63,479 nt of DNA, filler included, from Octopus bimaculoides (GCF_001194135.2; 5 parts of 5 records of this genome joined end to end with filler, not necessarily neighbours in it), one strand, 5' to 3'; shown: positions 125-22,128, counted from the first letter of the whole stretch. The notes: generated from the letters alone by a model not told the origin. A program made the numbers and translations.

Positions 125-580
125 TTCCACGGAATGAAAGGTAAACCTGTTGGGATATTTCTGTAAACTTTATCCCAAAAACCTGAAAGCGTATCCTCCT
201 GTGCTGTGTCTCTATGGAAAGAGAGAGTCTCTCGTCTGCTAATCATTGGAAAGTGAAGGAAATTGGAATACGATGAGTATTTAATGCACTTTATATATAT
301 AAAGTGCTGTTTTGAGGAGAGCTGTTAGTCGATGCCATCGACCCCAGTACATGACTGGTACTTTATTCCTTTACTTTTTTTGCTCATTTGACTGCGGCCA
401 TGCTGGAGCACCGCCTTTCATCGAACAAATCGACCGCAGCTCTTATTCTTTGTAAGCCTAGTACTTATTCTATCGGTCTGTTTTGCCGAACTGCTAAGTT
501 ACGGGGATGTAAACAGACCAACATCGGCTGTTAAGCAATGGTGGGGGAGGATATGCATAGACACACACAGACATATATGT

Positions 581-630
<50 letters not shown>

Positions 631-913: not shown

Positions 914-1680
914 CGTCCGTCTTTTCTGTCGCTAACCCTCATCTTTTAGTTCTCAAATATGTGAATTGTTATTTAACAAGCACAAATTAGATGAAATGCT
1001 AAGCTTTTTAACACTATTTAATCCTCTCATGGTTACAATATTAATCCTAAATTTAAATTCCAGTTAAAGCTCATATGTAGTTTAATTCTGTAACATGATT
1101 CTAAAAAAAAGCCCAATTCAGTTTGAATTAATTCATGGAGTATTATATAATAAGTAAAAAGTAACGATTTTTTTTCTTTTTGTTCAGAGAAAAACGCAAG
1201 TCACATTAACTTGCCACAACCTCTATTATTGTAAAATCATCATATAGACGTTTTCTTTTGTGTTTCACAACAACAACAAACAAACGGTCCCCGATCGTAA
1301 CATTCCCATCACGCGTTCCTGTCGTGAGAGAACCGTGGGAGATTCAAATAGATACTGCTTACGTATTTCGTGTGTATCTAAACATTAAAGCCATGAATAT
1401 AGCCAGTATGCAGATGTCTCCTTCTGTTTCATTGTTAGTAAAGACTTTTAGATCCACCACATATCTTCACATCAAAGTTGGTTTAGCAATGAATACGTTG
1501 AATAAAACCTTGAAATAACGTAGACTAAATACAGTGTATTTCAAATGTTTTCATTACGAACGTGTGCTGCTGCTGCTAAGTAAATAATATTGCAAGAATG
1601 ATGTAACTTCTTATATTCACAAATCACTCGATTTAACTTTGGTAAATTTTTATAATACAGAGATTATCAAATATTCTTTT

Positions 1681-1890
1681 CTACTCTAAGCACAGGGCCT
1701 GGGATTTTTGGAGAGGGGTGGCCAGTCGATTAGATCAACCCCAGTACGCAACTGGTGCTTAATTTATCGACCCCGAAAGGATGAAAGGCAAAGTCGACCT
1801 CGGCGGAATTTGAACTCGGAACGTAAAGACAGACGAAATACCGCCAAGCATTTTGCCCGGCGTGTTAATGTTTCTGCCAGCTCGCCGCCT
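1681..1890 (-). mobile_element. SINE family C (ggcggcgagctggcaga...gagttcaaattccgccgaggtcgactttgcctttcatcc...)
   Basis: Pol III-like A and B boxes. Further copies at ~2840-3056(-), ~7043-7238(+), ~9030-9200(-), ~9300-9512(-), ~27345-27712(-), ~31400-31790(-), ~33390-33710(-), ~35830-36130(-), ~39228-39400(+), ~40650-40800(+), ~41503-41650(-), ~49012-49110(-), ~53600-53740(+) and ~54090-54260(+). Confidence 0.9.
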
Positions 1891-3564
1891 TGGTTTATCC
1901 AATATTACATCTGATGTAGTAAAAATAAGGCTTCTCGTTTGTAAAGAAATAAGAGAGACAGACAGACAGAGAAAGAGAGAGAGAAAGAGTAATATAGCAG
2001 ATTGGATGAGATAATTGTGTTGTTTAGTGCAGAGGTCAGCCTTGTGTGAATAGATCTATGATCATAGGTGTGCTGGTCGTAATTATCCCAACACAGGCTC
2101 AGTCTATGAATATCTAGGATTACATTTTTGACTTGTGCTTCCAGTTGCATGACAGTGAGGTGTAATTTGAAAACCATCATCCTGTTATTTCAAGCAAGTC
2201 GAGCGACTTTGCAAAAGTCCCCATCTTGGCTCGAATCTCATATATGCATCTTAAGTCAGAAATATATAAAATAACAAAAACAATGGCAACAGATAAAGAT
2301 TCGTTTATTGGATGCCTTCGCTGCTCGCTAACGGGAAATTAGAAGAAGGTAAAAACTGTTATGATTGCTAGAGAATAGACAGGAAATGGAAACAGTGTCA
2401 TTGTGGGCCAGGAATAATAATGTGTTGATGGCTTTTTTTACCAATCATCTGGATGACCGTCATTTGGATGTGATATTTGTCGTGTGCATAGCAGCAGCAC
2501 CGTGTTTGACGGGTGAGTATTGAAGGGTTTTGAGGCGCATGCTCTGAAGGAAGCACAGATTTAGTACGAAGTGGCTCAGTTATATATGGATGGCGAAGGT
2601 TAAGAAAGGAGTAACGATTTATGTCTTCTACAAAGAAATGGAAGTTGTTAGAAGTGATAGTAAGCAGGTCGCTGATGTTCACGAGGAAAAGTATGAGAGA
2701 CTTCAAACAACCCTGGAGAACGTCAATGCTGCGAATTGACTCCCTTTTGGCTAAAAACAAAAACACTTGTGATGTCCGAGAAACATTAAATTTCAGTGCA
2801 TTATCTAGTTTATATTTCTAGAAAAAACCGCACCTATTATTGGTTTCAAATTTTGGCACGAGATCAGGAATTTCAGGAGAGGGGTTAAGTCGATAACATC
2901 GACCTCAGTACATGACTGGTACTTATTTCATCGACTCCGAAAGGATGAAAGACACAGTCGACCCCAGTGGAATTTGAACTCAGGACGTAGATATGGACGA
3001 AATGCCGCTAAGCATTTCACCCAGCGTGCAAACGATTCTGCTAGCCCGGCGCCTTATCCGCACGTATTATTGCGATATTGTTTTACAGACGAATGTCGTT
3101 TTTGCTGCTTGCTAACCCTCACCTTTTATTTTTCAAGTAAGGGATTTGTCATTTAGTACCTGCAAATAAGGTAAGACACTAACCCTTTTTTAACAGGCGC
3201 TGTTCTTTCCTCTCTGAATAAACTATGAAAAGATGGAGTAAATTGTTATTGACCATAGGCGCAGAAGTGGCTGTGTGGTAAGTAGCTTGCTTACCAACCA
3301 CACGGTTCAGGGTTCAGTCCCATTGCGTGGCACCTTGGGCAAGTGTCTTCTACTATAGCCTCGTAGTTCAAATGCTGTGGATGTCAACTTCACCTTTTAC
3401 AGTTGATAAAATAAAGTAGCAATCAAGTATTGGGATCGATGACATCGACAAAAGCCTCCCCTTAAAACCTGCTGGCCTTTGTCTCAATCAGAAGTTAAAA
3501 GTGAGTTCAAATTTCACTGAAGTTAACGTTGCTTTCCATTGATGAAATAAAGTACCAGTCATAT

Positions 3565-3957
3565 GGGCGCAGCGTGGCGGTGTGGCAAAAAAGCTTGCTT
3601 CCCAACCACATGGTTCCGGGTTCAGTTCCACTGTGTGGCACCTTGGACAACTGTCTTCTACTATAGCCTCAGGCCGACCACAGCCTTGTGAGTGGATTTG
3701 GTAGACGAAAACTGAAAGTAGCCCGTCGTATATGCATGAGTGTATGTGTGTCTGTGTTTGTCCCCCCCCATCTGCGCTTGACAACCGATGCTGGTGTGTT
3801 TACGTCCCCGTAACTTAGCGGTTCAGCAAGAGAGACTGATAGAATAAGTACTAGGCTTACAAAGGAATAAGTCCTGGGGACGATTTGTTCGACTAAAAGT
3901 GGTGCTCCAGCATGGCCGCAGTCAAATGACTGAAATAAATAAAAGAGCAAAAGAATA
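3565..3957 (+). mobile_element. tRNA-headed SINE family A, full length
   Basis: ggcgcag.gtggc.gtgtgg (A-box region), ggttccgggttcagt.ccactg (B-box region), internal microsatellite, tail gctccagcatggccgcagtcaaatgactgaaa...aaaagaata. Partial copies at ~366-552(-), 3257-3363, ~8445-8605(-), ~10455-10660(-), ~11075-11230(-), ~20470-20640(-), ~43370-43625, ~50165-50367(-), ~52470-52950, ~57190-57395 and ~61415-61480(-). Confidence 0.9.
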
Positions 3958-4851
3958 TATATGTAACTTAATTAATGTTATTGAAAAATTAAGTCATTAC
4001 AATAAAAAAAAAAATTAAACAAACCCACCGCAAATTAAGTTCGGTGACGGAGAAAGTATTTCTAAATTTACGTTGCGGGAAGAAGTCATTTTTGTGTTTT
4101 CATTTGAACGACTAAGATACAACGGAACAAATAAGACGAAAATGAAATGAAAGAAAATATGAAAGGAAGAGAAAAAGGGAACAATAATATTTTATACGAG
4201 ATTTTTGTTATTGTTATTAAAATGACCGAAGAGATAAGAGTGTATAATTTAATAGTCGTGGAAGAAATGGAAGAAATAGCTTTACTTTCAATGCTTGTCA
4301 AACATTGGTAGCAGGTGTGTTACATAGTTTTTGTCTAGGTGGACATAGGCGGCGGAGGAGCGGTGGTATTTACTTATATGACTGTACTAATCAGTTCGTA
4401 TAGGCACACGCACCAACACACGCGCATACACACACACACACAAATCACACACATTCGCACATACAAACACAGCCAGAGACAAATAATATTTGAAATTTTT
4501 CTAGGTGTACACATACGTATAGTACATGGTCACACGGTCACAGATAAGCGCACATAAGCACATATTTACACATTAACATACACTTCTATGTATGAGTGTG
4601 TGCGTGCGTGCGTATGTGTGTGTGGGCGTGCGTAGGTTTAGTTTCCATTTTTCTACAAAGGGGAAGGAGCCGGTTTCAAGCTTAGAATTAAGGATTCCCC
4701 AGAAGTTTTGCCACACGAACGAAGTAGTGATACATGCATGGAAGTATACAAGTATGCACATACATATATTTATACTTACATGCATACATACATACATACA
4801 TACATACATACATACGTACATATATATATATATATACACACATATATATAT

Positions 4852-5666: not shown

Positions 5667-5719
<53 letters not shown>

Positions 5720-5721
<2 letters not shown>

Positions 5722-6205
5722 GATATGTTTGGTTTTTGCTTTGTATTTGTACAAGTTGACTCCAAGTCTCACCCAGAGACCTCAAGAGACAACAAGTTAG
5801 AAGTTCAAGTTGGTGTTATGACTAGGGTGTCATATATTAGGATTTGCACAAAGTATTGTTCTAGAGAATGTCTGTGAAAACATAAGAAAATTAGAAGTTT
5901 GTTTTAAAAGTAATTTGATTATAAGATGCTGGTGTTGTGTTAAGACGACAATAAAAGGTGTTTGCTATTATGTACACTTAAAAGTATTTTCATATTGTTT
6001 ACCGATTAAAATGTTTTGGGGATTACATCGACAATATTTTTCTTATGATATGAGTAATTCCCATCAGCACTATTTTTTGAATTTCTTCCATTTTGGGATT
6101 TCCTGATATCTGGGATAGGTAGCAATCGGCCCCTTTTACTATAATTCCTAGGGCACCTATGGCAACAGGTATTATTTTAGTCTTGAGGTTCACTAATACC
6201 GACAA
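5720..6205 (-). mobile_element. R4/Dong-like retrotransposon 3' end (second copy)
   Basis: LKTKIIPVAIGALGIIVKGADCYLSQISGNPKMEEIQKIVLMGITHIIRKILSM* (PVxIGALG is typical of the restriction-like endonuclease tail). The 3' UTR matches the 33.1-33.3 kb copy and ends in a (TAA)n array. Confidence 0.75.
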
Positions 6206-7682
6206 TATTTACTGAGAATGGTAAAACAATCACTCTGAAATATTCCGTTTTGTCTTAAATATTATCACCAATTATTAAGTTGTACTGCAACATTGTACAT
6301 TTTATCAGTGAACAATGGTTATTTTAATATGTATGATGCCACTTGCAGCTGTGCACATTATGTAATCATCTCAAAGCTTATCAGTCTTTTTAATTCTTTT
6401 TATATTATTCTATTTTATATTGTAATGTAAATATCTTTAACGATCCGCCCTGTTCGGTTGAGTTTCTTTTCTAAAGAATAATTACGTACATGATACTAGA
6501 CAGTAATCAAAGTCTCGTCACTGTTTCCGTTTAGTCTTCATGATTTTTTGTACTGGAATTATATTAGAAATATTAAAGCCTGTGAATTTGTCGATATGAT
6601 AGACTACTGGACAAAATATTTTACAGTTTTAATGGTTCAATGGAAGCTAATACTTCAGTGAACAAAATATATTGTTCATTAAAATTCACTAGTTTTCAAG
6701 AAATATTGGGTTTAATGATTAATTTTTGTCAAGCAATGCAAGGGAGAGAACTCCGACATCCAACTTGATTAAATACCCAGGAAGGGAATGCAGCATCATG
6801 AAAACTGCGGCCATATTTCGGTCATGTGAGATCTTCTCAATAAAGGATAGATTCTTTCTGATTGATAACAAATATTTTGAATGAAGCATTTACGAATTTG
6901 GCAACGTAAAATAATCATGAGAGAAATTTTTAATGAACTAGAATAACATCTGTAATGAAGAGGAAATAATTTCTCCATGTTCGATCTGGTATTTTATTCT
7001 GATGGTATCACTATATAAAATATTGCCAATATATTAGATGAAGGCAGCCAGCTGGTAGAATGGTTAGCACGCCGGGCGAAATGCTTAGCGATATTTCGCC
7101 CGTCTTGACGGAGTTCAAATTCCGCCGTTGTCGACTTTGCTTTTCATTCGTTCAGAGTCAATAAAATAAGTACCAGTCGATGTAATCGACATATTTCATC
7201 CCACGAAACTGCTGGCCTTGTGCAAAAATTTGAAACCAACATATCAGGTTAAATCATATCGTTTACGCCTATTTTCGTATTAGCTTATGCATAGACAAAA
7301 CAGGTCAGCAGTATCATTGAAGGATGGTGTGATGACGGACTGAAACATTGCGTCTATAAATAAAATAAGAAGCATTTCATTTTGGTTAAGATATTTTAAG
7401 TAATGTCGCTTTAGGATAAACACTATTGTAGTTCAAATGTCTAACTATGACTTTTCCTTTTTGAAATACGGATAAACTAATATTTAAGTATATTTGCACA
7501 CTGCTGGTAGTAGGAATGCTTATCTTTTCATCTCACATCTTTTCATTCAACGATGTTATAAGTGCATATTGAAAGCTTTTCCACGCCTACTGTAATAGGA
7601 AAATATTGTTATATGTTCAAGTGGTACCTTATACTTAAACAAAAGTTTCTGGCGAACACACACGCACTCTTACACATGCATG

Positions 7683-7819
<137 letters not shown>

Positions 7820-10699
7820 ACTAGATGGAATCTATATTTTAAACAGCTACTGTTTTAAAAGTATTTTCGGAATATTTTTATGTGCACAAGGAAACAATTA
7901 CGCGTCATATTTTGCTTTTATGTTCTGTCCTTAGGAACGTTCACGATGGATTTCTATGCATTTAAAAATGATTCAGGATTAATTCAAGCAGTACATGAAG
8001 ACATCAATACACTAATCTTAGAGTTAGTATTTATTTTCACTTAAAAATGGATGTTGTGCTAGAACACAAAATACTGCGATAGTTTCGCTTTGAATTAAAG
8101 CTCATTAGTACTGATTACTCCATCGCTTATGGTTAAGCTAAATCCTGCCTATCAGTATACAGTATTTACCATATGAATCAATGAATGACTCAGCAAAATG
8201 GTAATGTGAAAATAATTAAATAACGAAGGTGGCTATACGCAATATAAGCCTTAATTCCAAGCAAAACTATCTTGCTAGTATGGTGACCTCGCTCGCTGTG
8301 GGGCGGTCATCTGCCCAGCTAGAACATAAACAATGTGCTTGGTGGGGGTGCATAAGCGTCTTTGAATCTTGTTTCTAACGATGTAGATGCCACCCTGCTG
8401 CCTCAGTCACTATTAGTGATAATAGAACTTTTCTTTTTAGTTTTGTATTGCATCTAGCCACCTACGTTATTTCGATGGTGCTTCATACAGTTTCCGTCAA
8501 CCAAATTCATTCACAAAACGTTGGTCGGTCTGGAACTACGGTAGAAGGCACTCACTTACCCATGATACCGCGCAGTGGGACTCAAAGCCACATGGTTGCA
8601 AAGAGAGGGTCTAACCACACACTCATGCCTGTCAATGACACCTGTAAAAGAATGAGGCAACATATCTTGTGTAATCATTTTCTTTCTGTCCAAACTTTTC
8701 CCCTTCTTCTGTATCAGGTAATATATGCTGTCTATCAGGTTAGCCTGCCATTGACGAACATATAAAATACGTGACGTACAAACAATTGGCATCTGAAATG
8801 ATATTAATATCTGTAGGTGTATATGTCTTCTTTTTTTTCTTTTACTTCCATCAACTGTCATTTTAAATATTTATAGTTTATTAAACATGCAGACAGATAC
8901 CTTATTTAGACGACACATACACATACTCACATCCATACGTACACCTACACACACATACGTAAATATATTTACATATTTCTTATACACAGACACAACAAAT
9001 ACAGCGTCGTGAAAAATGCTAAATATCGGTTTTAAATTTTGACACAAGGCCGGCAATTTCAAGGGTGGGGGTGGTAAGTAAAGTATCTCAGCGCTCAATT
9101 GACGCATTTTTTTTACCGACCCCGGCAGAATATGAACTCACAATGTAAAGACGGACGAAATGCTGCTAAGTATTTTGTCCGGCGTCCTCATGATTCTGCC
9201 AGTTGGCCGCTTTTGAAAAAGTGTTAAATATTGGTATTCCATCGGGAGAGTTAGAAACTGACTTCTGGAGCAAGGTTTGCCGTTGGGCAATAATAATCCT
9301 TTCTACTAAAGGCACAAAACCTGAAGTTTGGAGGGGAGGGGGACTAGTCAATTACATCGGCCCAAGTGTTTCACTGGTACGTTATTTATCGACTCCCGAA
9401 AGGATGAAGCGCAAAGACGATTTCGGTGAAATTTAACTCAGAACGTAGCGGCAGACGAAATACCGCTCAGCATTTCGCTCGGCGTGCCAACGATTCTGCC
9501 GGCTCGCCGCTTTCCGTTGGGCAGTAATAATACTATATACCTTGACAAAGTTTGGAGAGAGGTGCCTGGTGACGGGTTACTAGTATGTCAGAGTAGCAGT
9601 TTAGTTTAAGTGTACTAATCTTGATGGTCAAGGGCTGTAATATGGTCTTCAGTCCTATTCTGAGACTTACATTATATTTACCTGGACTGATCGATCCTCT
9701 TCTGAGAGTTACATCATGTCTACATGGACTTATCTCCNNNNNNNNNNNNNNNNNNNNNNNNNNNNNNNNNNNNNNNNNNNNNNNNNNNNNNNNNNNNNNN
9801 NNNNNNNNNNNNNNNNNNNNNNNNNNNNNNNNNNNNNNNNNNNNNNNNNNNNNNNNNNNNNNNNNNNNNNNNNNNNNNNNNNNNNNNNNNNNNNNNNNNN
9901 NNNNNNNNNNNNNNNNNNNNNNNNNNNNNNNNNNNNNNNNNNNNNNNNNNNNNNNNNNNNNNNNNNNNNNNNNNNNNNNNNNNNNNNNNNNNNNNNNNNN
10001 NNNNNNNNNNNNNNNNNNNNNNNNNNNNNNNNNNNNNNNNNNNTAGATAAATAGATAGATAGAGACACACACACAAACAGACAGACGGGCAGACAGAACA
10101 GGCAGAGAAAGAAGGAAACAGATAAAATGTGATGAGTCACGGTTATATTACATAAAAGAGATTTAATTAGAATTTGTAAACAGAGTTAATTACTTAATTA
10201 CTTCCCGCGGTAATTTACCTGAGAGAATTGATCTAAATACAAGCAAAATATTTACGATTTCTTTGGAATGCTTCAGCACGGTACATGAGAAAGTATCAGA
10301 ATCCGTTCTATTAGCGATAAACAAGACCAGTCGTGTGCCATAGTTACTGCTCTAATCGCTGGTACAGTTTGAATAGTTTTAAAAACTCGGTGGAAGGATT
10401 TGGGAACGATGACCTGAATAGCGATTAAATGTATCTTTTATTGTTTATTTGTTTCATTTATTGGACTGCTGCCACGCTGGAGCACCGCTCTGAAGGAATT
10501 TAGCAGAACAATTAGACTGCTGTACATATTGTTATTTTAAGTTTTATATTTACTACATCGCTATATTTTGCCGAACCTCTAAGTTACGGGTACACAAACT
10601 AACCAACACCAATTGTCGAGCGAAGTGGAGGTTAAACACAAACACAAAGGCACAAAGACCCCCCCCCNNNNNNNNNNNNNNNNNNNNNNNNCACACACA

Positions 10700-11070
10700 C
10701 ACAGAGGCTCAGGAGTGGCTCTGGGATTAGAAACTTGCTTACCAACCACATGGTTCCGGGTTCAGTCCTACTGCGTGACACCTACTATAGCCTTGGGCCG
10801 ACCAAAGCCTTGTGGTTGCACTCGGTAGACGGAAACTGAAAGAAACCCGTCGTATGTATATATATATGTACGTATTTGTATGTCTGTTTCTCCCTTCCAT
10901 CGCTTGACACCGATGTTGGTGTTCACGTCCTCCTAACTTAGCGGTTCACCAAAAGAGACCGATAGAATAAGTATTAGGCTTACAAAGAATAAGTCCTTGG
11001 GTCGATTTGTTCGACTAAAGGCGGTGCTCCAGCATGGCCGCAGTCAAATGATTGAAACAAGTAAAAGAAT
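10700..11070 (+). mobile_element. SINE family A, flanked by two antisense partial copies
   Basis: Colinear with 3565-3957. Antisense fragments lie directly upstream (~10455-10660) and downstream (~11075-11230). Confidence 0.85.
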
Positions 11071-11699
11071 GTATATACGACAGGCTTCCATACCGTTCCC
11101 GTGTACCAAATTCACTTACAAGGCCTAAGCTACAATAGAAGACATTTGCCCCAGGTGCCACACTGTGGGATGGAACCTAAAAGTACGTGGTTGCAAAGCA
11201 AGCTTCTTAACCACACAGCCATGCCTGCGCCTATTACCATCAAAAACAACAATTTTTTGTGGTGTTTCTGTCCACCATTTTTCAACTTAAACACAAATTG
11301 CCACTCTGATAGTCCAACGTTGTTCGTTCTTCCTCGAGTGTTCAAAAGATTGTTCAAACATTAGAATTGTGAATTGCTTTGAGGAGACACTGTAATATGC
11401 TCAGAATTTCCCTTCGTGTTTTATGAGGTCAGCGACATACGTTGTATATCAGGTTGTCCTGCCATCGATGAATACATAGAAGTTCAAAATTTGACACATT
11501 GTTACAATGTGAACGGTTTTTCACATAGTTGTGTGCTTTTAAATATTCATAATGTCTTAAATATGCAAACGTGTTTCATATTTAATCAGCGCACACATAT
11601 ACACATATGTACAAAAGTATTCGCACTCACGCAGTTCAATATAGAGTCACACATATCTTTTATCTCTGACACTAGGGAAGAGGGTTTTTGTTGTCCGAT

Positions 11700-12640: not shown

Positions 12641-13036
12641 TCTTTGCTTTCAAGACGAAAGGTGTTCTTCCATCAGGATAAAAACGGTCACATACAGCGA
12701 GGATGACATTCCATAGGCTAGAGCATTTTGAATGGGAAACGATCGCCCACCCACCATATTCGCCTCGTCTAATTATCATTTATTCCGCTGTCTTCAAAAT
12801 CATTTCGACTGAAAAATATGAATTTTGTAGACGACGTCAGAATAGTACTAGAGGAGTATTTTTCGTCACGGACAAGTGAATTTTGGAAGAGGGTCCTTGC
12901 AAGTCTACCAGACAGATGGAAGAGCCTTGTAGAAAATGAAGGAGAGTATATTTTAGATTAAAAAAATAAGTTTGTTTATCTTAATTTTAAAAAATAAAAG
13001 AAGTATAAAAACCGCATTATTTATGGGATGACCCAA
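12641..13036 (+). mobile_element. Decayed mariner transposon, 3' part with right TIR
   Basis: Frameshifted translation gives VFFHQD...HTARMT..RLEHFEWETIAHPPYSP...YHLFRCLQNHF...FWKRVLASLPDRWKSLVENEGEYILD*. It ends ttatgggatgacccaa followed by TA. Confidence 0.85.
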
Positions 13037-14018
13037 TATCTATATAGATATTAGGTTTCACTGTTTCAATCAGATTTGATGTTTTCTAGAAACTAATTGA
13101 TTGATGCTGAGATCGAACCGTTGAAGATGGAATTAGAAGTGATTATGAACGACATCATGGCCGTCAGTAGTGAAAAAAATGGAGGCTGAGTAGAAACCTG
13201 AGAAAACATAAATGAAATGATAAACATCGCAGAGATAAACCGGGGTCGGTGAGTATGAAGAAAAAGGGAGCAAAAATATGATGAAGATAGAAATGAAAAA
13301 TTATAACAATGATGGTATCAGACAGAACAGCTGAAGATATTTTAGAAATACTAGTTTGAGAGGAAATACCCAATGGCCTCTAGCTGGCTTTGCGGTCAGG
13401 AAGAGCAGAGTTACGTTACGCCCCGTCACTTATGAATAAATGGTGATCGTCTGCTCTTACAATTATTAATAACCTGATACAAAACGATAAATCTTTCTGA
13501 CAAGATATGTAGAAATATTTGAGACCCTTGCTTAATCATGTTGTTATGTAGAAATAGTTAGAGCGTTGTAGTAAACAATCTCGTAAAAAGAATTTCCAGG
13601 AAAATAAGCAAGTCAGAAAGGTTACTTATAAAATTATAATTTCTATCATTTTTCTTATATGACGGCGTTATGTATATAATGTTCCGTCACATTCTTAGAG
13701 AGTTAGATAATTAATTTCATATAATATGAATCACAGTATTTCTTTTTTTCGTTTCAAGTTCAGCTTCTGTATTGCAATTTTTGATCTCGTGGAATAAGCT
13801 GCGGACAAAGTTCTACTATTTATATATTGATATGTACATACATATATACTCACATCCATATACACTCATATACATACATACACACACGCATGCACACACA
13901 AACGCACACACACACACACATGTGCATATATGTGTATGTATGAATATGTATACATTTTACGTGTGCATATGAGCTTGAGTGGAGAATAAATATATATATA
14001 CATATATGCAGTTCAACA

Positions 14019-14051
<33 letters not shown>

Positions 14052-15708
14052 GTATATATATATNNNNNNNNNNNNNNNNNNNNNNNNNNNNNNNNNNNNN
14101 NNNNNNNNNNNNNNNNNNNNNNNNNNNNNNNNNNNNNNNNNNNNNNNNNNNNNNNNNNNNNNNNNNNNNNNNNNNNNNNNNNNNNNNNNNNNNNNNNNNN
14201 NNNNNNNNNNNNNNNNNNNNNNNNNNNNNNNNNNNNNNNNNNNNNNNNNNNNNNNNNNNNNNNNNNNNNNNNNNNNNNNNNNNNNNNNNNNNNNNNNNNN
14301 NNNNNCAGATTTGTGTGTGTGTGTGTGTGTGTGTGTGTATAAGTGTGCGTGCGTGCGTGCGTGCGTATGTGGATAAAAAGATTATACTTGTCCTTCCGCC
14401 AATTTGTACGTACAAAGATTCGATGCACACATTCACTGGAAAAGGTAAACATTTTACTTTGACTGATGCGGTTGTTATACACAACGAAAATCATCAAAAG
14501 AGAATTCGCAAGTATTGTTCTATTCCATTTCCCGAGAATGAGAAGGAGGAAAGGAGACACTAATTTTCTTTCTTATGTATAAATGTAAAATATCAAAGAA
14601 TTTGATCATTGAATACGACTATCATTTGTCATAAAACACGAAAACATCCTCAGAACTAGATTCTCATATATTCTCGGGAGAGACAATTGCATCGTACAAA
14701 AATAATCCTCAGTTATTTTTGAATTTATCAATTAATGCTATCTATTGATTAACTATCATCGATATCATCAAGGAGGGGAGGCAATGATACTCTTAATCGA
14801 TAATTCAAACTTTCGAATATTATTGAAAATTTTCTTTGACTGTCCTCAAATATTCCGCTTTATTTCCCGTTCGTGTTCATTAATTATACGCTAATTAGTT
14901 TCATTCACTTATTTCCTGTTTGCACAGTGGTAATTAAAGACAGTTAATGACAAAATTAATTTGTAAACGACTCATAAATATTTCAACTCTACAAAAAGCA
15001 TTCCATCATAATATTTAATTAATTGGTGTTAATTAGCTAGAAACAAAGCTTAGGCAAAGTTAAATCAAAGCCAAGATTAACAAAATAAATCAACTGCTAC
15101 TTTCTCACTCGTAAAATATCCCTTGGAAGGAAGGAAGGAAGGAAGGTGAGTCTTATTTCAAAGAACAAACCACCCTGATGATTTCTTTTGTGAAGCAAAT
15201 CATTCTTGACACCCTTCGTGGAATCAAGCTAACAAGAGAGACCTAATCCGTCGCTTAACAAACTCTCTCAGACACTATCCTCTTTTAAAAATATCTACGC
15301 TTAGATAATGCGACCAGGGTACGAAACTGGAAAGACAAAGTTGGATGTTAATGGCTTGAATGTCTTTTAGGACAGGTTTGCTGGAGTAAGTCTGACTATT
15401 GGATGAAAATAACAAATTCGACAAAACTTCATTCATGAAATATCTGTAACGGTAAAATATTTTGTGCAATTTAAAAAACTCATCACAAACTAATAAGAAA
15501 ATAAAGTCAACAAAACAATTGAGAAACAAAAACAAGAAAAAGTTGGATCGGAAGTGAGAAGAGTTTATAGAAACAGGAAGACAGTAGAATAATTTCGAAA
15601 AAAGAGCCATTCCTTATAACTGAACTGTCGAAACATTTTATTGGCAGATTTCTGGCAAAGAAGCTGATTTCCGGCCAGATGATACAATAACTATTCTGAA
15701 ATGTGTGT

Positions 15709-15741
<33 letters not shown>

Positions 15742-17299
15742 TGTTTTTCTGTCTGTGTGTGTGTGTGTATGTGTGTATTCACAACACCAGTGGTGACTTC
15801 CAGCCACCAGGCAAATGATAGAACGTCTTGAGTTTGAGATTTTGCACTATTTTTACATTTATTGGAAGATTTCTGGTGAAAACTATTAATGTTATTTCTG
15901 TTTCGATCTAGGTCTGACATGACTGAGAAGGTCTACGTTTAAAGGTGTCCTAGTTGTGACATTGGTTTTTTTTTTAATATCTTCGACTGCTTCATCCGAT
16001 GTGTTCCTCTTTTACTTTTTTTTAAAAATCATTTCTTTCTTACCCATCTAATGTTATCGATAAAGACCAAAGAGGATCAAAATATTTACAAACACCGAAA
16101 AGAATGCAGACGACACACAATATGAATTTGTGGCTCGTCTTTAAACGAATTTTGTCTAACTTTTTCTCATGGTTTATATGACAACCATGCAATGCCACTT
16201 TTACTGTACTTAAAACGTAATTTGATCAAGTGTATTCGCGGAATTTTTGTTAATGGTAAGTTTGGTATAAAAGTACACAGAACCAGTGTAGTTTAGAAAT
16301 ATGGCGAGACGGCTAAACCAATGAACAAATATCATACGGTAGTCAAGCCAGAAACTATAAAATTCAGGCCGTCAGTATCAATGAAAGTATGCAAAGACTG
16401 AAGATATCACAGAAAAGCAAGGAGTTATAAGGGAATCGTATGTAATGCTGGCCTCCAGGGATATTGCGTGTATGTGTTTACATTAATTAGGTAATTTAAT
16501 TTAATTATGTCTATTATAGCTAATTATTACGTCGGAGTAAAACAGCATGGTTAACGACCCTGTGTTAGTTCCATTCTACAGCTGTTGAGGCAAGATAATT
16601 TGCATGAAAAACCCTTGGCTTCCGTCTCGCTAAAGAATGACACGGAGCTTTTAGTACTGAATAGCATTAGACGATGAGGAAACGAAAGTTGTTGTTGTTG
16701 CTGCTGCTGTCTTGTTCGTTTTGCTATGACTTAGTCAACAGGGGAGGGGGCAGGGCCTATAACATTTGCAAGGGTATCAAAATTAGTCAGAGAAGGGTGA
16801 AAGGGACCTCGATTTATGGATTGCTGCAGAGTTATTCTTAGTTATTGTCAGACCTGTGAAGGCATCCGTGGAACTGGTGTTGGTGGTGTTAAGAGATGTA
16901 CAGGACGCAGTATCTAAGAATAAATAGAATCCGAAGAGCTTCCGCACTGTTTCAAATCCCAAACCCCAAACTCCAAACCCCAAGGTGCAAGGTCGAAAAC
17001 ACTTAATCAATGTTGCATGCATGGGAATTAAACCAGGTGGATGATTACGAAGCAGACGACTACTTCTACGAAACTTTTCTAATAACGCTCAGTTATTAAC
17101 ACAAAAAGACTGTTGGAAAAGATTTTATATTTTTCTTATCTCTTCAAAGCAATTTTTTCATTAAAATATTAAAGTACAGTTGATTATTTGCTTTAACTCG
17201 AAGTCGAAATGACACGGTCTCACTCCTTAGCATTACAACGGGTTTTTTGTTTGTTTTTGTTTCCATGAAAATATTGAAAAAAGAAATCCCGGTGTTAAA

Positions 17300-17520
17300 A
17301 AACAAACAAACCGCGATTCGGCCGCTCTCTGACACATCTATGGGCAGCCTGTGGCAGTAGAAACGACCGGTGTTCTCGGCCCCCGGACCACATCGATTCA
17401 TCTCTAGCGGTCGAGCGTCCATCATTGACAAGATCAAGGAAGGTCGAAAATCACGTGATCTGGTGGCCTCGGCGCTGGAGATGGCGGAAATGTATTTCCC
17501 CGCTAGCGATATAAACAAGA
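17300..17520. promoter_or_regulatory. CpG-rich promoter-like island with E-box and YY1-like motifs
   Basis: Locally CpG-dense against the AT-rich background. Contains TCACGTGA (~17451-17458) and GAGATGGCGG (~17478-17487), and no recognisable repeat family. Confidence 0.4.
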
Positions 17521-17953
17521 GTACATTTTACACCAAAAGCCATTTTGAGAGCTTCACTTATGGCATCTACCGCAATATAACTCATTCTAACTGAACATCC
17601 TCGTTGAAGTGGGGATAAATATAAACTTATGTTGAACAGGGGCCTTTAATCTAACGTGGGACCAATCATTTCCTATAAAGCTTTTGTTATATGCTTAGAT
17701 ATTTACTTCAAACAGACATCTAACTCCCAGCAACAATAATAAGACGTTAGATAGGCTTGTATCAGACATGTGTCTCTGCAGATACTTCCGCTAAACTTAT
17801 GCCCCAACATCTTTTCTTGTTTTGTTTCCGTCTGAGGCAAACTAACCAACTACCAGCTCTGTACTTTTAGCCTGAAAACACATTTTGTGCTTTTGTATGT
17901 GTATATATGTTTCGAGGTAGGTATGTATGTAGTATGTATGCATATACATAGGA

Positions 17954-17988
<35 letters not shown>

Positions 17989-19953
17989 NNNNNNNNNNNN
18001 NNNNNNNNNNNNNNNNNNNNNNNNNNNNNNNNNNNNNNNNNNNNNNNNNNNNNNNNNNNNNNNNNNNNNNNNNNNNNNNNNNNNNNNNNNNNNNNNNNNN
18101 NNNNNNNNNNNNNNNNNNNNNNNNNNNNNNNNNNNNNNNNNNNNNNNNNNNNNNNNNNNNNNNNNNNNNNNNNNNNNNNNNNNNNNNNNNNNNNNNNNNN
18201 NNNNNNNNNNNNNNNNNNNNNNNNNNNNNNNNNNNNNNNNNNNNNNNNNNNNNNNNNNNNNNNNNNNNNNNNNNNNNNNNNNNNNNNNNNNNNNNNNNNN
18301 NNNNNNNNNNNNNNNNNNNNNNNNNNNNNNNNNNNNNNNNNNNNNNNNNNNNNNNNNNNNNNNNNNNNNNNNNNNNNNNNNNNNNNNNNNNNNNNNNNNN
18401 NNNNNNNNNNNNNNNNNNNNNNNNNNNNNNNNNNNNNNNNNNNNNNNNNNNNNNNNNNNNNNNNNNNNNNNNNNNNNNNNNNNNNNNNNNNNNNNNNNNN
18501 NNNNNNNNNNNNNNNNNNNNNNNNNNNNNNNNNNNNNNNNNNNNNNNNNNNNNNNNNNNNNNNNNNNNNNNNNNNNNNNNNNNNNNNNNNNNNNNNNNNN
18601 NNNNNNNNNNNNNNNNNNNNNNNNNNNNNNNNNNNNNNNNNNNNNNNNNNNNNNNNNNNNNNNNNNNNNNNNNNNNNNNNNNNNNNNNNNNNNNNNNNNN
18701 NNNNNCGAAGTGAAGTAAAAATGCTTGCTTTTTTCTATAAATTTCATTTAATTCTTACATCACTTGTGATAGAAACATATGTTAAACATACGGTCCGGGA
18801 TTTCTGTACAGTTGACGATATAATACGTTTTAATGTCCTGGTGGCATATTATCGTATAACAGGGGTCACTTGAAGTTTCTATCTCTCTCTCTCTCTCTCT
18901 CATACACACACACACATACACACGCACGCACACACACATACACATATGATATATATGTCTGTATGTATAACCACCCTCCGTGCACAAGTGTTTAGGTACA
19001 CGTTCTATCACTTGCATTTACTTTCTACTTCTGTCTCTATTCCCCACACCGTCTGCCTTTCTCTCCACGCACACACATCGGTGGACTCACTCATAATCAC
19101 ACACACTGACACACACACACACACTGACACGTTTACATACATAGATGCACATGTGTATATATACACACACATATATACATACATACATACATACATGCAT
19201 ACATACATATNNNNNNNNNNNNNNNNNNNNNNNNNNNNNNNNNNNNNNNNNNNNNNNNNNNNNNNNNNNNNNNNNNNNNNNNNNNNNNNNNNNNNNNNNN
19301 NNNNNNNNNNNNNNNNNNNNNNNNNNNNNNNNNNNNNNNNNNNNNNNNNNNNNNNNNNNNNNNNNNNNNNNNNNNNNNNNNNNNNNNNNNNNNNNNNNNN
19401 NNNNNNNNNNNNNNNNNNNNNNNNNNNNNNNNNNNNNNNNNNNNNNNNNNNNNNNNNNNNNNNNNNNNNNNNNNNNNNNNNNNNNNNNNNNNNNNNNNNN
19501 NNNNNNNNNNNNNNNNNNNNNNNNNNNNNNNNNNNNNNNNNNNNNNNNNNNNNNNNNNNNNNNNNNNNNNNNNNNNNNNNNNNNNNNNNNNNNNNNNNNN
19601 NNNNNNNNNNNNNNNNNNNNNNNNNNNNNNNNNNNNNNNNNNNNNNNNNNNNNNNNNNNNNNNNNNNNNNNNNNNNNNNNNNNNNNNNNNNNNNNNNNNN
19701 NNNNNNNNNNNNNNNNNNNNNNNNNNNNNNNNNNNNNNNNNNNNNNNNNNNNNNNNNNNNNNNNTATATTAGAAACAAGTTTCAAACAAAAAAATGTCTA
19801 CACCTAGTATAAATAGTGGAAAAGAAACAAAGAAAATATAGACAAGATATAAAAGCAACGGCTTCCTTTTATAAAAACAAAGATATAGACATACAAATAA
19901 TAATTTGAGGTGGAATTGAGAAGTATAAAACTCATTATCATGAGTGAATATAG

Positions 19954-19992
19954 AAAGTCATACCGGTTTCGTCATCGCTATTCATTGACTTT
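19954..19992 (-). ncRNA. Minimal type I hammerhead-like motif (left arm of foldback; A3-U8 core, GUA site)
   Basis: aaagtca-ATGAATA-GCGATGAC-GAAA-CCGG-TA-tgacttt: 7-bp helix I, 1-bp helix II, palindromic ACCGGU helix III. Confidence 0.6.
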
Positions 19993-20264
19993 GAATTAAC
20001 ACCGATTTCCAAACGGTGTTGAATCTAATTGTACCTGAGTGAAAAGATTGCATACAGCGGAGATAAGCAGTTCTGAAAGTGATGTAGTTAAGGTAGATAC
20101 GATTAACAGAATATGGATGGTATATCGGTTGTATGAGGATTAGTGGTATTATTGGTATTAGTACAGTTAGTAGTGTCCTGTTTTAAGTTGTGCGTTCACG
20201 TTAAGTTGTGGTTAATGAAAGTTACCTATTAGACTCAATACCGATTGGAAATCGGTATTGATTC

Positions 20265-20303
20265 AAAGTCAGTGAACAGCGATGACGAAACCGGTGTGAC
20301 TTT
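20265..20303 (+). ncRNA. Minimal type I hammerhead-like motif (right arm; G3-C8 core, G at position 17)
   Basis: aaagtca-GTGAACA-GCGATGAC-GAAA-CCGG-TG-tgacttt: same fold as the left arm, but the GUG triplet is predicted not to cleave. Confidence 0.55.
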
Positions 20304-20683
20304 CTATATTGACTAATAATCTTTATACTTCTTAATTCCACCCGAAATCCTTTATTTGTATGTATATATCTTTGTTTATATAAAAGAAAAAAACATTACT
20401 TTTATACCTAGTGTCCATTTTCCTTGTTTCTTTTTACTATTCTCCTATATATAGATACATATATATATATGCGGTCATGTTGGGACATCGCCTTCAAGTA
20501 ATTTAGTGTAGCGAATTGACCCCAGTACCTATTCTTTTAAGCCTTGTACATATTCTGTCTGTTTCTTTTGTCGAACGCTTGTTTGCGGGGACTTAATCAC
20601 AACACCACTTGTCAAGCGGTGATGGGGGACAAGCAACTACATGCCCATATATGCACGTATGTATGTATCTATATGTATATCTA

Positions 20684-20725
<42 letters not shown>

Positions 20726-22128
20726 NNNNNNNNNNNNNNNNNNNNNNNNNNNNNNNNNNNNNNNNNNNNNNNNNNNNNNNNNNNNNNNNNNNNNNNNNNN
20801 NNNNNNNNNNNNNNNNNNNNNNNNNNNNNNNNNNNNNNNNNNNNNNNNNNNNNNNNNNNNNNNNNNNNNNNNNNNNNNNNNNNNNNNNNNNNNNNNNNNN
20901 NNNNNNNNNNNNNNNNNNNNNNNNNNNNNNNNNNNNNNNNNNNNNNNNNNNNNNNNNNNNNNNNNNNNNNNNNNNNNNNNNNNNNNNNNNNNNNNNNNNN
21001 NNNNNNNNNNNNNNNNNNNNNNNNNNNNNNNNNNNNNNNNNNNNNNNNNNNNNNNNNNNNNNNNNNNNNNNNNNNNNNNNNNNNNNNNNNNNNNNNNNNN
21101 NNNNNNNNNNNNNNNNNNNNNNNNNNNNNNNNNNNNNNNNNNNNNNNNNNNNNNNNNNNNNNNNNNNNNNNNNNNNNNNNNNNNNNNNNNNNNNNNNNNN
21201 NNNNNNNNNNNNNNNNNNNNNNNNNNNNNNNNNNNNNNNNNNNNNNNNNNNNNNNNNNNNNNNNNNNNNNNNNNNNNNNNNNNNNNNNNNNNNNNNNNNN
21301 NNNNNNNNNNNNNNNNNNNNNNNNNNTATGTATATATTAATATTAGGGACAAAATCCAAAATTACAGGTAAAAACTCAATTAAAATCAATTTATAAAAAA
21401 TTAAAATTAAATTGAGCTTTATAGATAAAATATATATAAAATATATAGTTTTAGGGAAAATTCGTAATATATATATATATATATAGATTTTCATTAAATA
21501 TATATGTATCAGTTTTTTATCTATATATATAATACATACATACATGTATGCTTGTGTATAATTCCTATGTATGTATGTATATGTACATGCGCATGCGCGT
21601 GTATGTGTGCGTATGTGTGTAGGTTTGCCTTTATTCAAAATTATAAATACTGCCTATGTCTGCGAAAAGTTGAAAACTCTAAAAATAGATGAATTTTGAA
21701 AGAAAAATAACATCAATTTATATATGTTTTTTAAAATCTAATATAATGTTTATTTAGTATTATAATTATTTATAAACCCTTATAGGGGAACAGTTGTGAG
21801 AAATATCAATGAAGATTTTAAGGCGTATAAAATATTCTTTAGAAATTTCACAACTGAAATTCTAATTAAAATATTTTCTGTAAAATTTAATTCGCATTTG
21901 AAATATTCTAAATATTGAACTTTAATTGAAAGTTGGTCAATTTAGAACATCGATACGATATAAATACTTTTTATATCAGTAATTAACTGTATCTTGAGAT
22001 AGTTCAGTAAAAGCCCAGCTTACTTTTGATATTACACTGATGTATATATACATACTTACTTCAGCAATGTAATTACACGTGTGCCGTTGCCGATTTCTCT
22101 TCCAGTTTTGAACTTTACCCTTTTTTTC

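What the first reader, a model, noticed from the sequence alone, without database searches (positions are those of the whole stretch)
19954..20303. Paired minimal hammerhead-like ribozymes with compensatory swaps at the catalytic 3-8 pair
Seen: both foldback arms read aaagtca-[N3 UGAA N8 A]-GCGAUGAC-GAAA-CCGG-U-N17-ugacuuu. The 7-bp helix I abuts the core exactly as in a type I hammerhead, and helix III is the palindrome ACCGGU. The core is AUGAAUA in the left arm (minus) and GUGAACA in the right arm (plus), instead of CUGANGA, so both copies keep a Watson-Crick 3-8 pair (A-U, G-C) while differing at both positions. Known: C3-G8 is a tertiary Watson-Crick pair in the active hammerhead fold, and minimal, dimer-dependent type I hammerheads with palindromic helix III occur in the terminal repeats of Penelope-like elements. 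Inference: a non-canonical purine-3/pyrimidine-8 hammerhead family with a 1-bp helix II that CUGANGA-based searches would miss. Only the left copy has a cleavable GUA triplet.
Basis: partly seen in the sequence, partly recalled or inferred. Interest (0 to 1): 0.85.

Follow-up and report, generated by a model that had tools for sequence, protein, structure and literature searches.

The report
Hammerhead-like motif in octopus foldback repeat
Two diverged inverted copies of a ~235-base non-coding repeat in an octopus genome each carry a 39-base string that looks like a stripped-down hammerhead ribozyme, but nothing here shows that it cuts RNA; it is more likely an inherited part of a transposon-type foldback.

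Summary
The minus strand (19992->19954) and the plus strand (20265-20303) both read AAAGUCA-N3-UGAA-N8-A-G(CGAUGA)C-GAA-A(CCGG)U-N17-UGACUUU. They differ only at positions 3, 8 and 17 (A/U/A versus G/C/G).

They sit inside a ~660-nt foldback. Its arms (~19797-20031 and ~20226-20461) are 78% identical, around a unique ~195-nt centre. TA-rich microsatellites and assembly gaps flank it. The scaffold is from an Octopus genome.

The match is unlikely by chance in one window (roughly 1e-4 to 1e-3), but tens of chance matches are expected per genome.

Several results do not support a ribozyme:
- No Rfam hammerhead model matches, even at E<=10.
- Helix II is a single base pair that never forms in the predicted ensemble.
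- The favoured fold pairs position 8 with 17, which explains the "compensatory" changes as well as a 3-8 pair does.
- There are only two related sequences.
- The copies are inverted, so a read-through transcript would bury the motif in a ~230-bp duplex.
- No further copy and no Penelope reading frame was found.

Precedents exist for a natural U3-A8 core, for single-base-pair helix II, for G3-C8 with G17, and for opposite-strand pairs. A real variant is therefore not excluded (~10-15%). A BLAST against octopus assemblies would decide.

The parts
19797..20031 (-). Left arm of the foldback (repeat unit; its sense orientation, as defined by the hammerhead-like motif, points leftwards)
   Evidence: Inverted-repeat pairs I1-I4; global alignment of the arms: 78.5% identity overall, 90-93% over 19944-19988
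20032..20225 (.). Unique centre (spacer) with a degenerate GTA/GTT trinucleotide run; no counterpart in either arm
   Evidence: Arm alignment breaks down here; weak matches only to trinucleotide microsatellites elsewhere in the window
20226..20461 (+). Right arm of the foldback (same repeat unit, sense pointing rightwards)
19954..19992 (-). Left hammerhead-like 39-mer: A3, U8, A17. The predicted cleavage site would lie between 19961 and 19960
20265..20303 (+). Right hammerhead-like 39-mer: G3, C8, G17. The predicted site would lie between 20296 and 20297
20236..20260 (+). Perfect 11-bp hairpin (loop GGA) 4 nt upstream of the right motif
   Evidence: Inverted repeat I23; fold z = -3.5 for 20222-20318; pair counts
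19997..20021 (-). Same hairpin in the left arm: one compensatory change (C-G instead of U-A) and two mismatches
   Evidence: pairs 9-27, 6-30, 14-22
20658..20725 (.). (TA)n/(TATA)n microsatellite running into the right assembly gap (N run 20726-21326); a shorter TA-rich run lies at 20446-20470, at the outer end of the right arm
19156..19210 (.). (ACAT)n/(TA)n microsatellite running into the left assembly gap (N run 19211-19764). The gap ends only about 33 nt before the left arm

Best explanation
The locus is a ~660-bp foldback in an Octopus genome. Two inverted, long-diverged copies of one ~235-nt non-coding repeat unit surround a ~195-nt unique centre, in a TA-microsatellite-rich, gap-ridden, repeat-dense stretch.

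Each unit reads, from its inner end outwards: CWATTAGAYTCAA, an 11-bp hairpin, the 39-nt hammerhead-like segment, then ~150 nt of A/T-rich sequence with short sub-repeats.

The structure most likely arose by transposable-element activity. One route is a head-to-head insertion of 5'-truncated copies, as is typical of Penelope-like retroelements. The other is a MITE/foldback-type element.

The hammerhead-like string is simply part of the duplicated unit. It resembles a hammerhead by coincidence and does not self-cleave. If the locus is transcribed through, the RNA folds into one long hairpin that sequesters the motif.

Shown: the anatomy, the divergence between arms, the host genus, and the absence of a match to known ribozyme models. 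Inferred: the transposon origin and the lack of catalysis.
For: - Inverted repeat and arm alignment.
- The whole 19797-20455 stretch folds into a single hairpin of -261 kcal/mol, z = -22.
- Octopus origin. A window repeat ORF hits an O. vulgaris protein at 88% identity; other repeat ORFs hit O. bimaculoides proteins; and interspersed repeats are shared at 80-95% with O. vulgaris and O. bimaculoides loci.
- There are no long ORFs and no Pfam domain in the six frames of 14306-17988.
- Microsatellites and N gaps lie on both sides.
- No hammerhead or other ribozyme model matches, even at E<=10 on 401 nt or on the whole window.
- The hammerhead secondary structure is +4 kcal/mol, against MFE values of -5.2 and -6.6; the G10.1-C11.1 pair has probability <=0.003; and the 39-mers fold no better than shuffles, with z = -1.1 and -0.4.
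- The motif is not conserved much above the rest of the arms: 90-93%, against 90% for 19870-19898.
- The 3/8/17 differences fit an 8-17 pair as well as a 3-8 pair.
Against: - The match to the hammerhead plan is tight. Nine of eleven invariant core bases are present, the other two form a Watson-Crick 3-8 pair in both copies, G10.1-C11.1 is present, helix I is flush with the core, and there is a palindromic A-CCGG-U. The estimated chance rate is only 1e-4 to 1e-3 per window.
- All three differences between the copies obey hammerhead logic: 3-8 stays paired, and base 17 can never pair with base 3.
- The outward orientation of both motifs, the unequal extent of the two copies and the TA-repeat flanks fit the inverted 5'-truncated insertions of Penelope-like elements, which do carry minimal dimeric hammerheads (PMC4209133, PMC8557442).
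- I could not show that the unit is a multi-copy repeat, and I found no target-site duplication.
Confidence: 0.62

Rival explanations
1. Active, previously undescribed natural hammerhead variant. It would be a type I 'miniribozyme' with a single G10.1-C11.1 pair in place of helix II, a purine-3/pyrimidine-8 tertiary pair, and a palindromic helix III that needs a second copy in trans. It would be carried by a cephalopod Penelope-derived or retrozyme-like repeat, where it processes the element's transcript.
For: - The architecture matches exactly and is rare by chance.
- The three differences between the copies (A3/U8/A17 versus G3/C8/G17) keep the 3-8 pair and avoid a 3-17 trap.
- A G3-C8 core is reported to be more active with G17 (PMC3884650).
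- Miniribozymes with a one-base-pair helix II cleave efficiently at 10 mM Mg (PMC544870).
- Natural U3-A8 min-hammerheads, palindromic helix III and opposite-strand pairs 100-700 bp apart are known in Penelope-like elements (PMC4209133).
- A homodimer cofold keeps the ACCGGU x ACCGGU helix.
Against: - No Rfam hit.
- No natural hammerhead with a 1-bp helix II or an R3-Y8 core is on record in the papers read.
- Min-hammerheads of Penelope-like elements have the opposite proportions: helix II of 6-8 bp, helix I of 2-5 bp, and an extra base after A9.
- There is no loop-loop tertiary contact, so activity at physiological Mg would be poor.
- Competing folds (8-17/9-16.1, and GUCA with the internal UGAC) dominate the ensemble.
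- The only partner copy is antisense on the same transcript.
- No other copy was found.
- The covariation rests on two sequences.
Confidence: 0.12
2. Decayed relic of a genuine min-hammerhead from a Penelope-like element. The arms would be old 3'-terminal fragments of a PLE inserted head-to-head, with a ribozyme that has since lost most of helix II and is now inactive.
For: - The inverted, unequally truncated copies, the microsatellite flanks and the assembly gaps fit published PLE insertion structure (PMC8557442).
- Arm divergence of ~21% of aligned columns, gaps included, indicates an old event.
- Some cephalopod PLE lineages are described as ancient remnants (PMC8557442).
Against: - Decay would not be expected to leave two different Watson-Crick 3-8 pairs and all the other core bases intact in both copies.
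- No RT or GIY-YIG remnant was detected in the one flank scanned, 14306-17988.
- No canonical CUGANGA...GAAA motif with a real helix II was found in the window or in 59 kb of other octopus DNA.
Confidence: 0.12
3. Hairpin-RNA locus. The foldback would be transcribed as one unit and its ~230-bp imperfect duplex processed into small RNAs. The hammerhead-like string would be irrelevant.
For: A long hairpin of -261 kcal/mol, z = -22.
Against: There is no expression or small-RNA evidence available here, and any inverted repeat gives such a fold. Arm identity of 78% with indels makes a poor duplex in the outer half.
Confidence: 0.08
4. Assembly artefact: a chimeric inverted duplication created when short reads were joined between two gaps.
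For: The piece holding the foldback is only 961 nt long (19765-20725) and lies between two N runs. PLE-type inverted structures are known to trouble short-read assemblies (PMC8557442).
Against: The arms differ at about 21% of aligned columns, including indels. An artefactual inverted copy would be identical.
Confidence: 0.03

Closest known systems
Minimal hammerheads (min-HHRs) of Penelope-like elements (Cervera & de la Pena 2014, PMC4209133)
   Same: Type I topology; helix III reduced to A15.1-U16.1 plus a palindrome, so that two copies must pair; a G10.1-C11.1 pair; natural covariation at 3-8 (U3-A8) already reported; pairs on opposite strands 100-700 bp apart reported; low or no activity as monomers.
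   Different: Those have a long helix II (6-8 bp), a short helix I (2-5 bp) and an unpaired base between A9 and G10.1. Here helix II is 1 bp, helix I is 7 bp, and there is no extra base. The 3-8 pair is purine-pyrimidine (A-U, G-C), not C-G or U-A. No PLE reading frame was seen nearby, and no family of copies was seen.
[quoted passage not shown]
   Same: The same reduction of helix II to one G-C pair closed by a few unpaired bases. This shows that such a core can cleave in vitro.
   Different: They are synthetic, trans-acting, keep the canonical C3/G8, use a 4-nt linker and are assayed at 10 mM Mg. Here the motif is natural DNA-encoded sequence, acts in cis, has a 6-nt linker and an altered 3-8 pair, and is untested.
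Inverted 5'-truncated insertion structures of Penelope-like elements (PMC8557442)
   Same: Two copies head to head with unequal truncation, flanked by (TA)n-type microsatellites and prone to assembly gaps.
   Different: No RT/GIY-YIG coding sequence, pseudo-LTR or 30-40-bp tail could be identified. The arms could equally be a MITE/foldback-type DNA element.
Foldback / MITE-type inverted-repeat transposon remnants
   Same: Long inverted arms with internal sub-repeats (family D2), a short unique centre, no coding capacity, and an A/T-rich context.
   Different: No target-site duplication and no further copies could be demonstrated.

Membership tests
Hammerhead ribozyme (Rfam Hammerhead_1, _3, _II, HH9, HH10) | 5' core box C3-U4-G5-A6-N7-G8-A9 | tested here: not met
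   AUGAAUA (left) and GUGAACA (right): U4, G5, A6 and A9 are present, while C3 and G8 are replaced by A/U and G/C. Both replacements could still form a Watson-Crick 3-8 pair.
Hammerhead ribozyme (Rfam Hammerhead_1, _3, _II, HH9, HH10) | 3' core G12-A13-A14 followed by the A15.1-U16.1 pair | tested here: met
   GAA-A-CCGG-U in both copies
Hammerhead ribozyme (Rfam Hammerhead_1, _3, _II, HH9, HH10) | A real helix II (natural examples have several base pairs) closed by G10.1-C11.1 | tested here: not met
   Only G-C around a 6-nt CGAUGA loop. The pair probability in the ensemble is <=0.003.
Hammerhead ribozyme (Rfam Hammerhead_1, _3, _II, HH9, HH10) | Helix I flush with the core on both strands | tested here: met
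   AAAGUCA/UGACUUU, 7 bp, invariant in both copies. It competes with an internal UGAC.
Hammerhead ribozyme (Rfam Hammerhead_1, _3, _II, HH9, HH10) | Cleavage site N17 = H (not G) | tested here: inconclusive
   A17 in the left copy, G17 in the right copy. G17 is tolerated in some contexts, and reportedly better with G3-C8 (PMC3884650).
Hammerhead ribozyme (Rfam Hammerhead_1, _3, _II, HH9, HH10) | Score against the curated covariance models | tested here: not met
   No hammerhead hit at E<=10 on 19930-20330 or on the whole window
Hammerhead ribozyme (Rfam Hammerhead_1, _3, _II, HH9, HH10) | Covariation of helices and of the 3-8 pair across a family | tested here: inconclusive
   Two sequences only. 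There is one double change at 3-8, equally explained by 8-17; 140/500 and 118/500 shuffles do as well.
Hammerhead ribozyme (Rfam Hammerhead_1, _3, _II, HH9, HH10) | Site-specific self-cleavage | not testable with these tools
   Needs in vitro transcription assays or mapping of RNA ends
Min-hammerhead of Penelope-like elements | Long helix II (6-8 bp), short helix I (2-5 bp), unpaired base between A9 and G10.1 (PMC4209133) | tested here: not met
   Helix II is 1 bp, helix I is 7 bp, and A9 is followed directly by G10.1
Min-hammerhead of Penelope-like elements | Palindromic 15.2-16.2 / loop 3 that allows a dimeric helix III | tested here: met
   ACCGGU. The intermolecular helix is kept in the homodimer cofold.
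Min-hammerhead of Penelope-like elements | Location in the pseudo-LTR of an element encoding RT and GIY-YIG endonuclease | tested here: inconclusive
   No long ORF. No Pfam domain in the six frames of 14306-17988. However, 554-nt and 601-nt gaps flank the piece, and heavily truncated copies lack the ORF anyway.
Min-hammerhead of Penelope-like elements | Hundreds to thousands of related copies in the genome | not testable with these tools
   No octopus genome can be searched by DNA here. No copy was found in the window or in 59 kb of O. vulgaris/O. bimaculoides DNA.
Foldback / inverted-repeat transposon remnant | Long inverted arms, short centre, no coding capacity | tested here: met
Foldback / inverted-repeat transposon remnant | Target-site duplication and multiple dispersed copies | tested here: inconclusive
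   The outer ends lie in low-complexity TA-rich sequence ~33 nt from a gap. No duplication is recognisable, and no other copies were found in the little octopus DNA available.

The most novel reading that the evidence does not exclude
Cephalopod genomes carry a family of natural 'miniribozyme' hammerheads. These would have helix II reduced to the single G10.1-C11.1 pair, a purine-3/pyrimidine-8 tertiary pair that covaries together with base 17, and a palindromic helix III that requires dimerisation. They would ride on Penelope-derived non-autonomous repeats and be invisible to CUGANGA-based descriptors and Rfam models.
Probability: 0.1. Interest if true: 0.8.

Novelty: new member of a known kind. 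Interest (0 to 1): 0.3.

Why it matters
If the motif were an active ribozyme, it would be the first natural hammerhead with a one-base-pair helix II and a purine-3/pyrimidine-8 core. That would show that current descriptor- and model-based censuses miss a class of self-cleaving RNAs in animal repeats, and it would give a natural test of the 3-8/17 interplay so far seen only in engineered variants.

If it is an inherited piece of a foldback repeat, as I think more likely, it is an ordinary feature of a repeat-rich octopus genome. It is also a useful caution: a very minimal hammerhead descriptor is expected to hit tens of chance sites per large genome.

Tried and rejected
- **Rfam scans.** I scanned the whole window and the 401-nt locus at E<=10. 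There was no ribozyme hit. The mir-297, mir-3149 and similar hits are TA/TG microsatellites.
- **Copies in public collections.** The 17-mer in viral contigs gave 6 hits, all with unrelated flanks. The 22-mer in metagenome contigs gave one GC-rich bacterial hit. In prokaryote genomes it gave one Desulfovibrio coding-sequence hit. All are chance matches.
- **Six-frame pseudo-protein of both arms** against 5.8 billion proteins, to catch repeat-derived gene calls: nothing.
- **Exact look-up of ten window ORFs:** none is in the collection.
- **Fetching octopus DNA through repeat-derived proteins.** Only two loci were obtainable, L008 (O. vulgaris, 20 kb) and L009 (O. bimaculoides, 39 kb). Three other proteins are not on record. 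Neither locus holds an arm copy.
- **Canonical min-hammerhead descriptor** on the window plus these loci: only one weak hit, in L008 (3-bp helix I), taken as chance.
- **Pfam on the six frames of 14306-17988:** nothing.
- **Other assignments of the motif.** I tried the 11-bp hairpin as helix II, and the internal CGAUGA as a CUGAUGA box with helix II deleted. Neither places the core boxes and helix I correctly.
- **A 'GAAAYCGGTRT' sub-repeat as a protein-binding site.** I saw two direct copies and one inverted copy per arm, but by my estimate a 9/11 match is expected by chance at this scale.
- **Literature string search for CGAAACCGGU/T:** only unrelated primers and papillomavirus E2 sites.
- **Evaluating the dimeric 'double hammerhead' energy with RNAcofold.** This is not possible because the topology is a pseudoknot in that representation.

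Full report
**1. What is there**

The window is an AT-rich (36% G+C) eukaryotic scaffold piece with six N gaps, many microsatellites and no long reading frames.

It comes from an octopus:
- A repeat-derived ORF matches a hypothetical protein of Octopus vulgaris at 88% identity.
- Other repeat-derived ORFs match O. bimaculoides proteins.
- The window shares several interspersed repeat families, at 80-95% identity, with an O. vulgaris chromosome locus (L008) and an O. bimaculoides chromosome locus (L009).

The finding lies on a 961-nt island (19765-20725) between two gaps.

**2.

The two 39-mers are:
- Left, minus strand 19992->19954: AAAGUCA-A-UGAA-U-A-G(CGAUGA)C-GAA-A(CCGG)U-A-UGACUUU.
- Right, plus strand 20265-20303: the same, with G, C and G at hammerhead positions 3, 8 and 17.

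The 17-mer GCGATGACGAAACCGGT occurs nowhere else in the window, with 0 expected.

The motifs belong to a larger inverted repeat. The inner 93 nt are 88% complementary. The relationship extends to about 19797-20031 and 20226-20461, at 78.5% identity with several indels, around a unique centre of ~195 nt. The whole stretch folds into one hairpin of -261 kcal/mol, z = -22. That is simply what an inverted repeat does.

Each arm also holds an 11-bp hairpin just upstream of the motif. It is perfect in the right arm. The left arm has one compensatory change and two mismatches.

**3. Is it more than chance?**

I wrote a descriptor for exactly this plan: helix I flush with the core, N3-UGA-N-N8-A with a Watson-Crick 3-8 pair, G-loop-C, GAA, A-palindrome-U, N17.

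It finds only these two sites in the window. In 200 Mb of random sequence of the same composition it gave:
- 5 hits with helix I >=4 bp;
- 1 hit with helix I >=6 bp;
- 0 hits with helix I >=7 bp.

That is about 1e-4 to 1e-3 per window, so the resemblance is not trivial. By extrapolation it is also some 10-130 chance sites in a genome of ~2.7 Gb. That genome size is from my own knowledge of O. bimaculoides.

Three caveats apply. The descriptor was written after the fact. Allowing any two core deviations, rather than only a 3-8 swap, would raise the rate about a hundred-fold by my estimate. And the two arms are one observation, not two.

**4. Tests of the ribozyme reading**

- No Rfam hammerhead model, or any other ribozyme model, matches. 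This holds even at E<=10 with the laxer filters used for a 401-nt search.
- Helix II is a lone G-C pair around six bases. Its probability in the predicted ensemble is <=0.003.
- The hammerhead secondary structure costs +4 kcal/mol, against -5.2 and -6.6 for the best folds.
- The 39-mers fold no better than shuffles, with z = -1.1 and -0.4.
- The best folds extend helix I by pairing base 8 with base 17 and A9 with U16.1, with probabilities of 0.65 and 0.94.
- The three differences between the copies (A/U/A versus G/C/G) therefore support an 8-17 pair exactly as well as a 3-8 pair.
- Counting pairs on the two-sequence alignment gives one double change under either structure, and 140/500 and 118/500 shuffles do as well. 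There is no statistical power.
- All three changes are transitions. Given a purine site and a pyrimidine site that both changed by transition, the odds of a 'compensatory' outcome are one in two.
- The motif is among the best-conserved parts of the arms at 90-93%, but 19870-19898 is at 90% as well.
- In a homodimer cofold the ACCGGU x ACCGGU helix forms, but helix I is displaced by a local hairpin using the internal UGAC.
- The only second copy nearby is on the other strand. A single transcript would therefore carry one sense and one antisense copy, and would hide the motif in a ~230-bp duplex.

**5.

The literature removes several a-priori objections:
- Min-hammerheads of Penelope-like elements are type I, have a palindromic helix III, act as dimers, and keep G10.1-C11.1. 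They include a natural U3-A8 covariant. They are found as pairs on opposite strands 100-700 bp apart (PMC4209133).
- Engineered miniribozymes with helix II reduced to a single G-C pair cleave efficiently in vitro (PMC544870).
- G17 hammerheads retain activity, and a G3-C8 core is said to be more active with G17 than with C17 (PMC3884650, data not shown there). The right copy is therefore not necessarily dead, and the triple change is coherent in hammerhead terms.
- Penelope-like elements often insert as an inverted 5'-truncated copy next to another copy. They prefer microsatellites such as (TA)n, and they break short-read assemblies (PMC8557442).

Here both motifs point outwards, the two copies appear to extend unequally, and TA-rich repeats and gaps flank the structure.

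The same paper on Penelope-like elements gives proportions opposite to those seen here: helix II of 6-8 bp, helix I of 2-5 bp, and an extra base after A9.

**6. Search for relatives**

This is the decisive test, and I could not complete it.
- The collections that can be searched by DNA hold no octopus genome. Pattern scans of viral, metagenome and prokaryote contigs returned only chance matches with unrelated flanks.
- A six-frame pseudo-protein of the arms found no repeat-derived gene call.
- Using repeat-derived proteins as handles I could fetch only 59 kb of octopus DNA. It holds no arm copy and no canonical min-hammerhead.
- No RT or endonuclease remnant is detectable in the six frames of 14306-17988.

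**7. Verdict**

The most likely reading (about 0.6) is a transposon-type foldback: two old inverted copies of a ~235-nt non-coding unit, whose hammerhead-like segment is inherited sequence with no catalytic role.

The alternatives are:
- a real, active variant hammerhead, about 0.1;
- a decayed relic of a Penelope-element hammerhead, about 0.1;
- a hairpin-RNA locus, below 0.1;
- an assembly artefact, about 0.03. The arms differ at about 21% of aligned columns, which argues against this.

The claim is cheap to settle with a BLAST against octopus assemblies and a cleavage assay. Until then it remains an attractive resemblance at a single locus.

Noticed in passing
window 12682-12958 (+), with frame shifts: Remnant of the C-terminal part of a mariner-type transposase. 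It matches Mos1 transposase and human SETMAR in the PDB (E = 2e-7 to 2e-5), including the ...H..YSP.L and LP.RW motifs. Pfam did not detect it.
   Followed up: partly
window 362-587, 3255-3363, 3560-3966, 8480-8582, 10557-11234: Several copies of an octopus interspersed repeat (SINE-like), 76-94% identical to copies in O. vulgaris (L008) and O. bimaculoides (L009). Spurious ORFs in it match 'hypothetical' octopus proteins. No tRNA-like head was found by ARAGORN.
   Followed up: partly
window 1670-1898, 2876-3059, 7037-7177, 9286-9513: A second ~220-nt interspersed repeat family, present at least 8 times in the 39-kb O. bimaculoides locus L009 at 76-87% identity.
   Followed up: no
window 5691-6191: A stretch 84-88% identical to L009 19302-19696 inside the O. 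bimaculoides kelch-like 10 gene region. It is probably another dispersed repeat.
   Followed up: no
window 550-620, 4735-4805, 13819-14043, 17919-17988, 19134-19204, 20647-20713, 21536-21633: Sub-threshold Rfam 'mir-297 / mir-3149 / mir-466 / mir-1277' hits (up to 58 bits, against gathering scores of 81-100). All lie in TA/TG/TATG microsatellites, so they are false positives of low-complexity miRNA models.
   Followed up: yes
L008 18201-18328 (-), Octopus vulgaris OX597836.1: A U4 spliceosomal snRNA gene or pseudogene, 69.8 bits against a gathering score of 46.
   Followed up: no
window 19826-19844 and 19873-19891 (and mirror positions in the right arm): Short direct sub-repeats AACAAAGA(AAAT)ATAGACA within the outer, A/T-rich half of each foldback arm (family D2). 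This resembles the sub-repeat structure of foldback-type terminal repeats.
   Followed up: no
window 20247-20261 and 20285-20299 (and mirror positions in the left arm): The GAAA-CCGG-U part of the hammerhead-like core resembles the 3' half of the neighbouring hairpin (GAAATCGGTAT versus GAAACCGGTGT, 9 of 11). This could mean a repeated binding motif, but by my estimate the match is within chance for this search space.
   Followed up: partly
L009 10001-29090: The O. bimaculoides locus returned for kelch-like protein 10 is flagged 'translates_to_query: no'. This is as expected for a multi-exon gene given as a genomic range, and it shows that repeat-derived exons are annotated in that gene model.
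   Followed up: no
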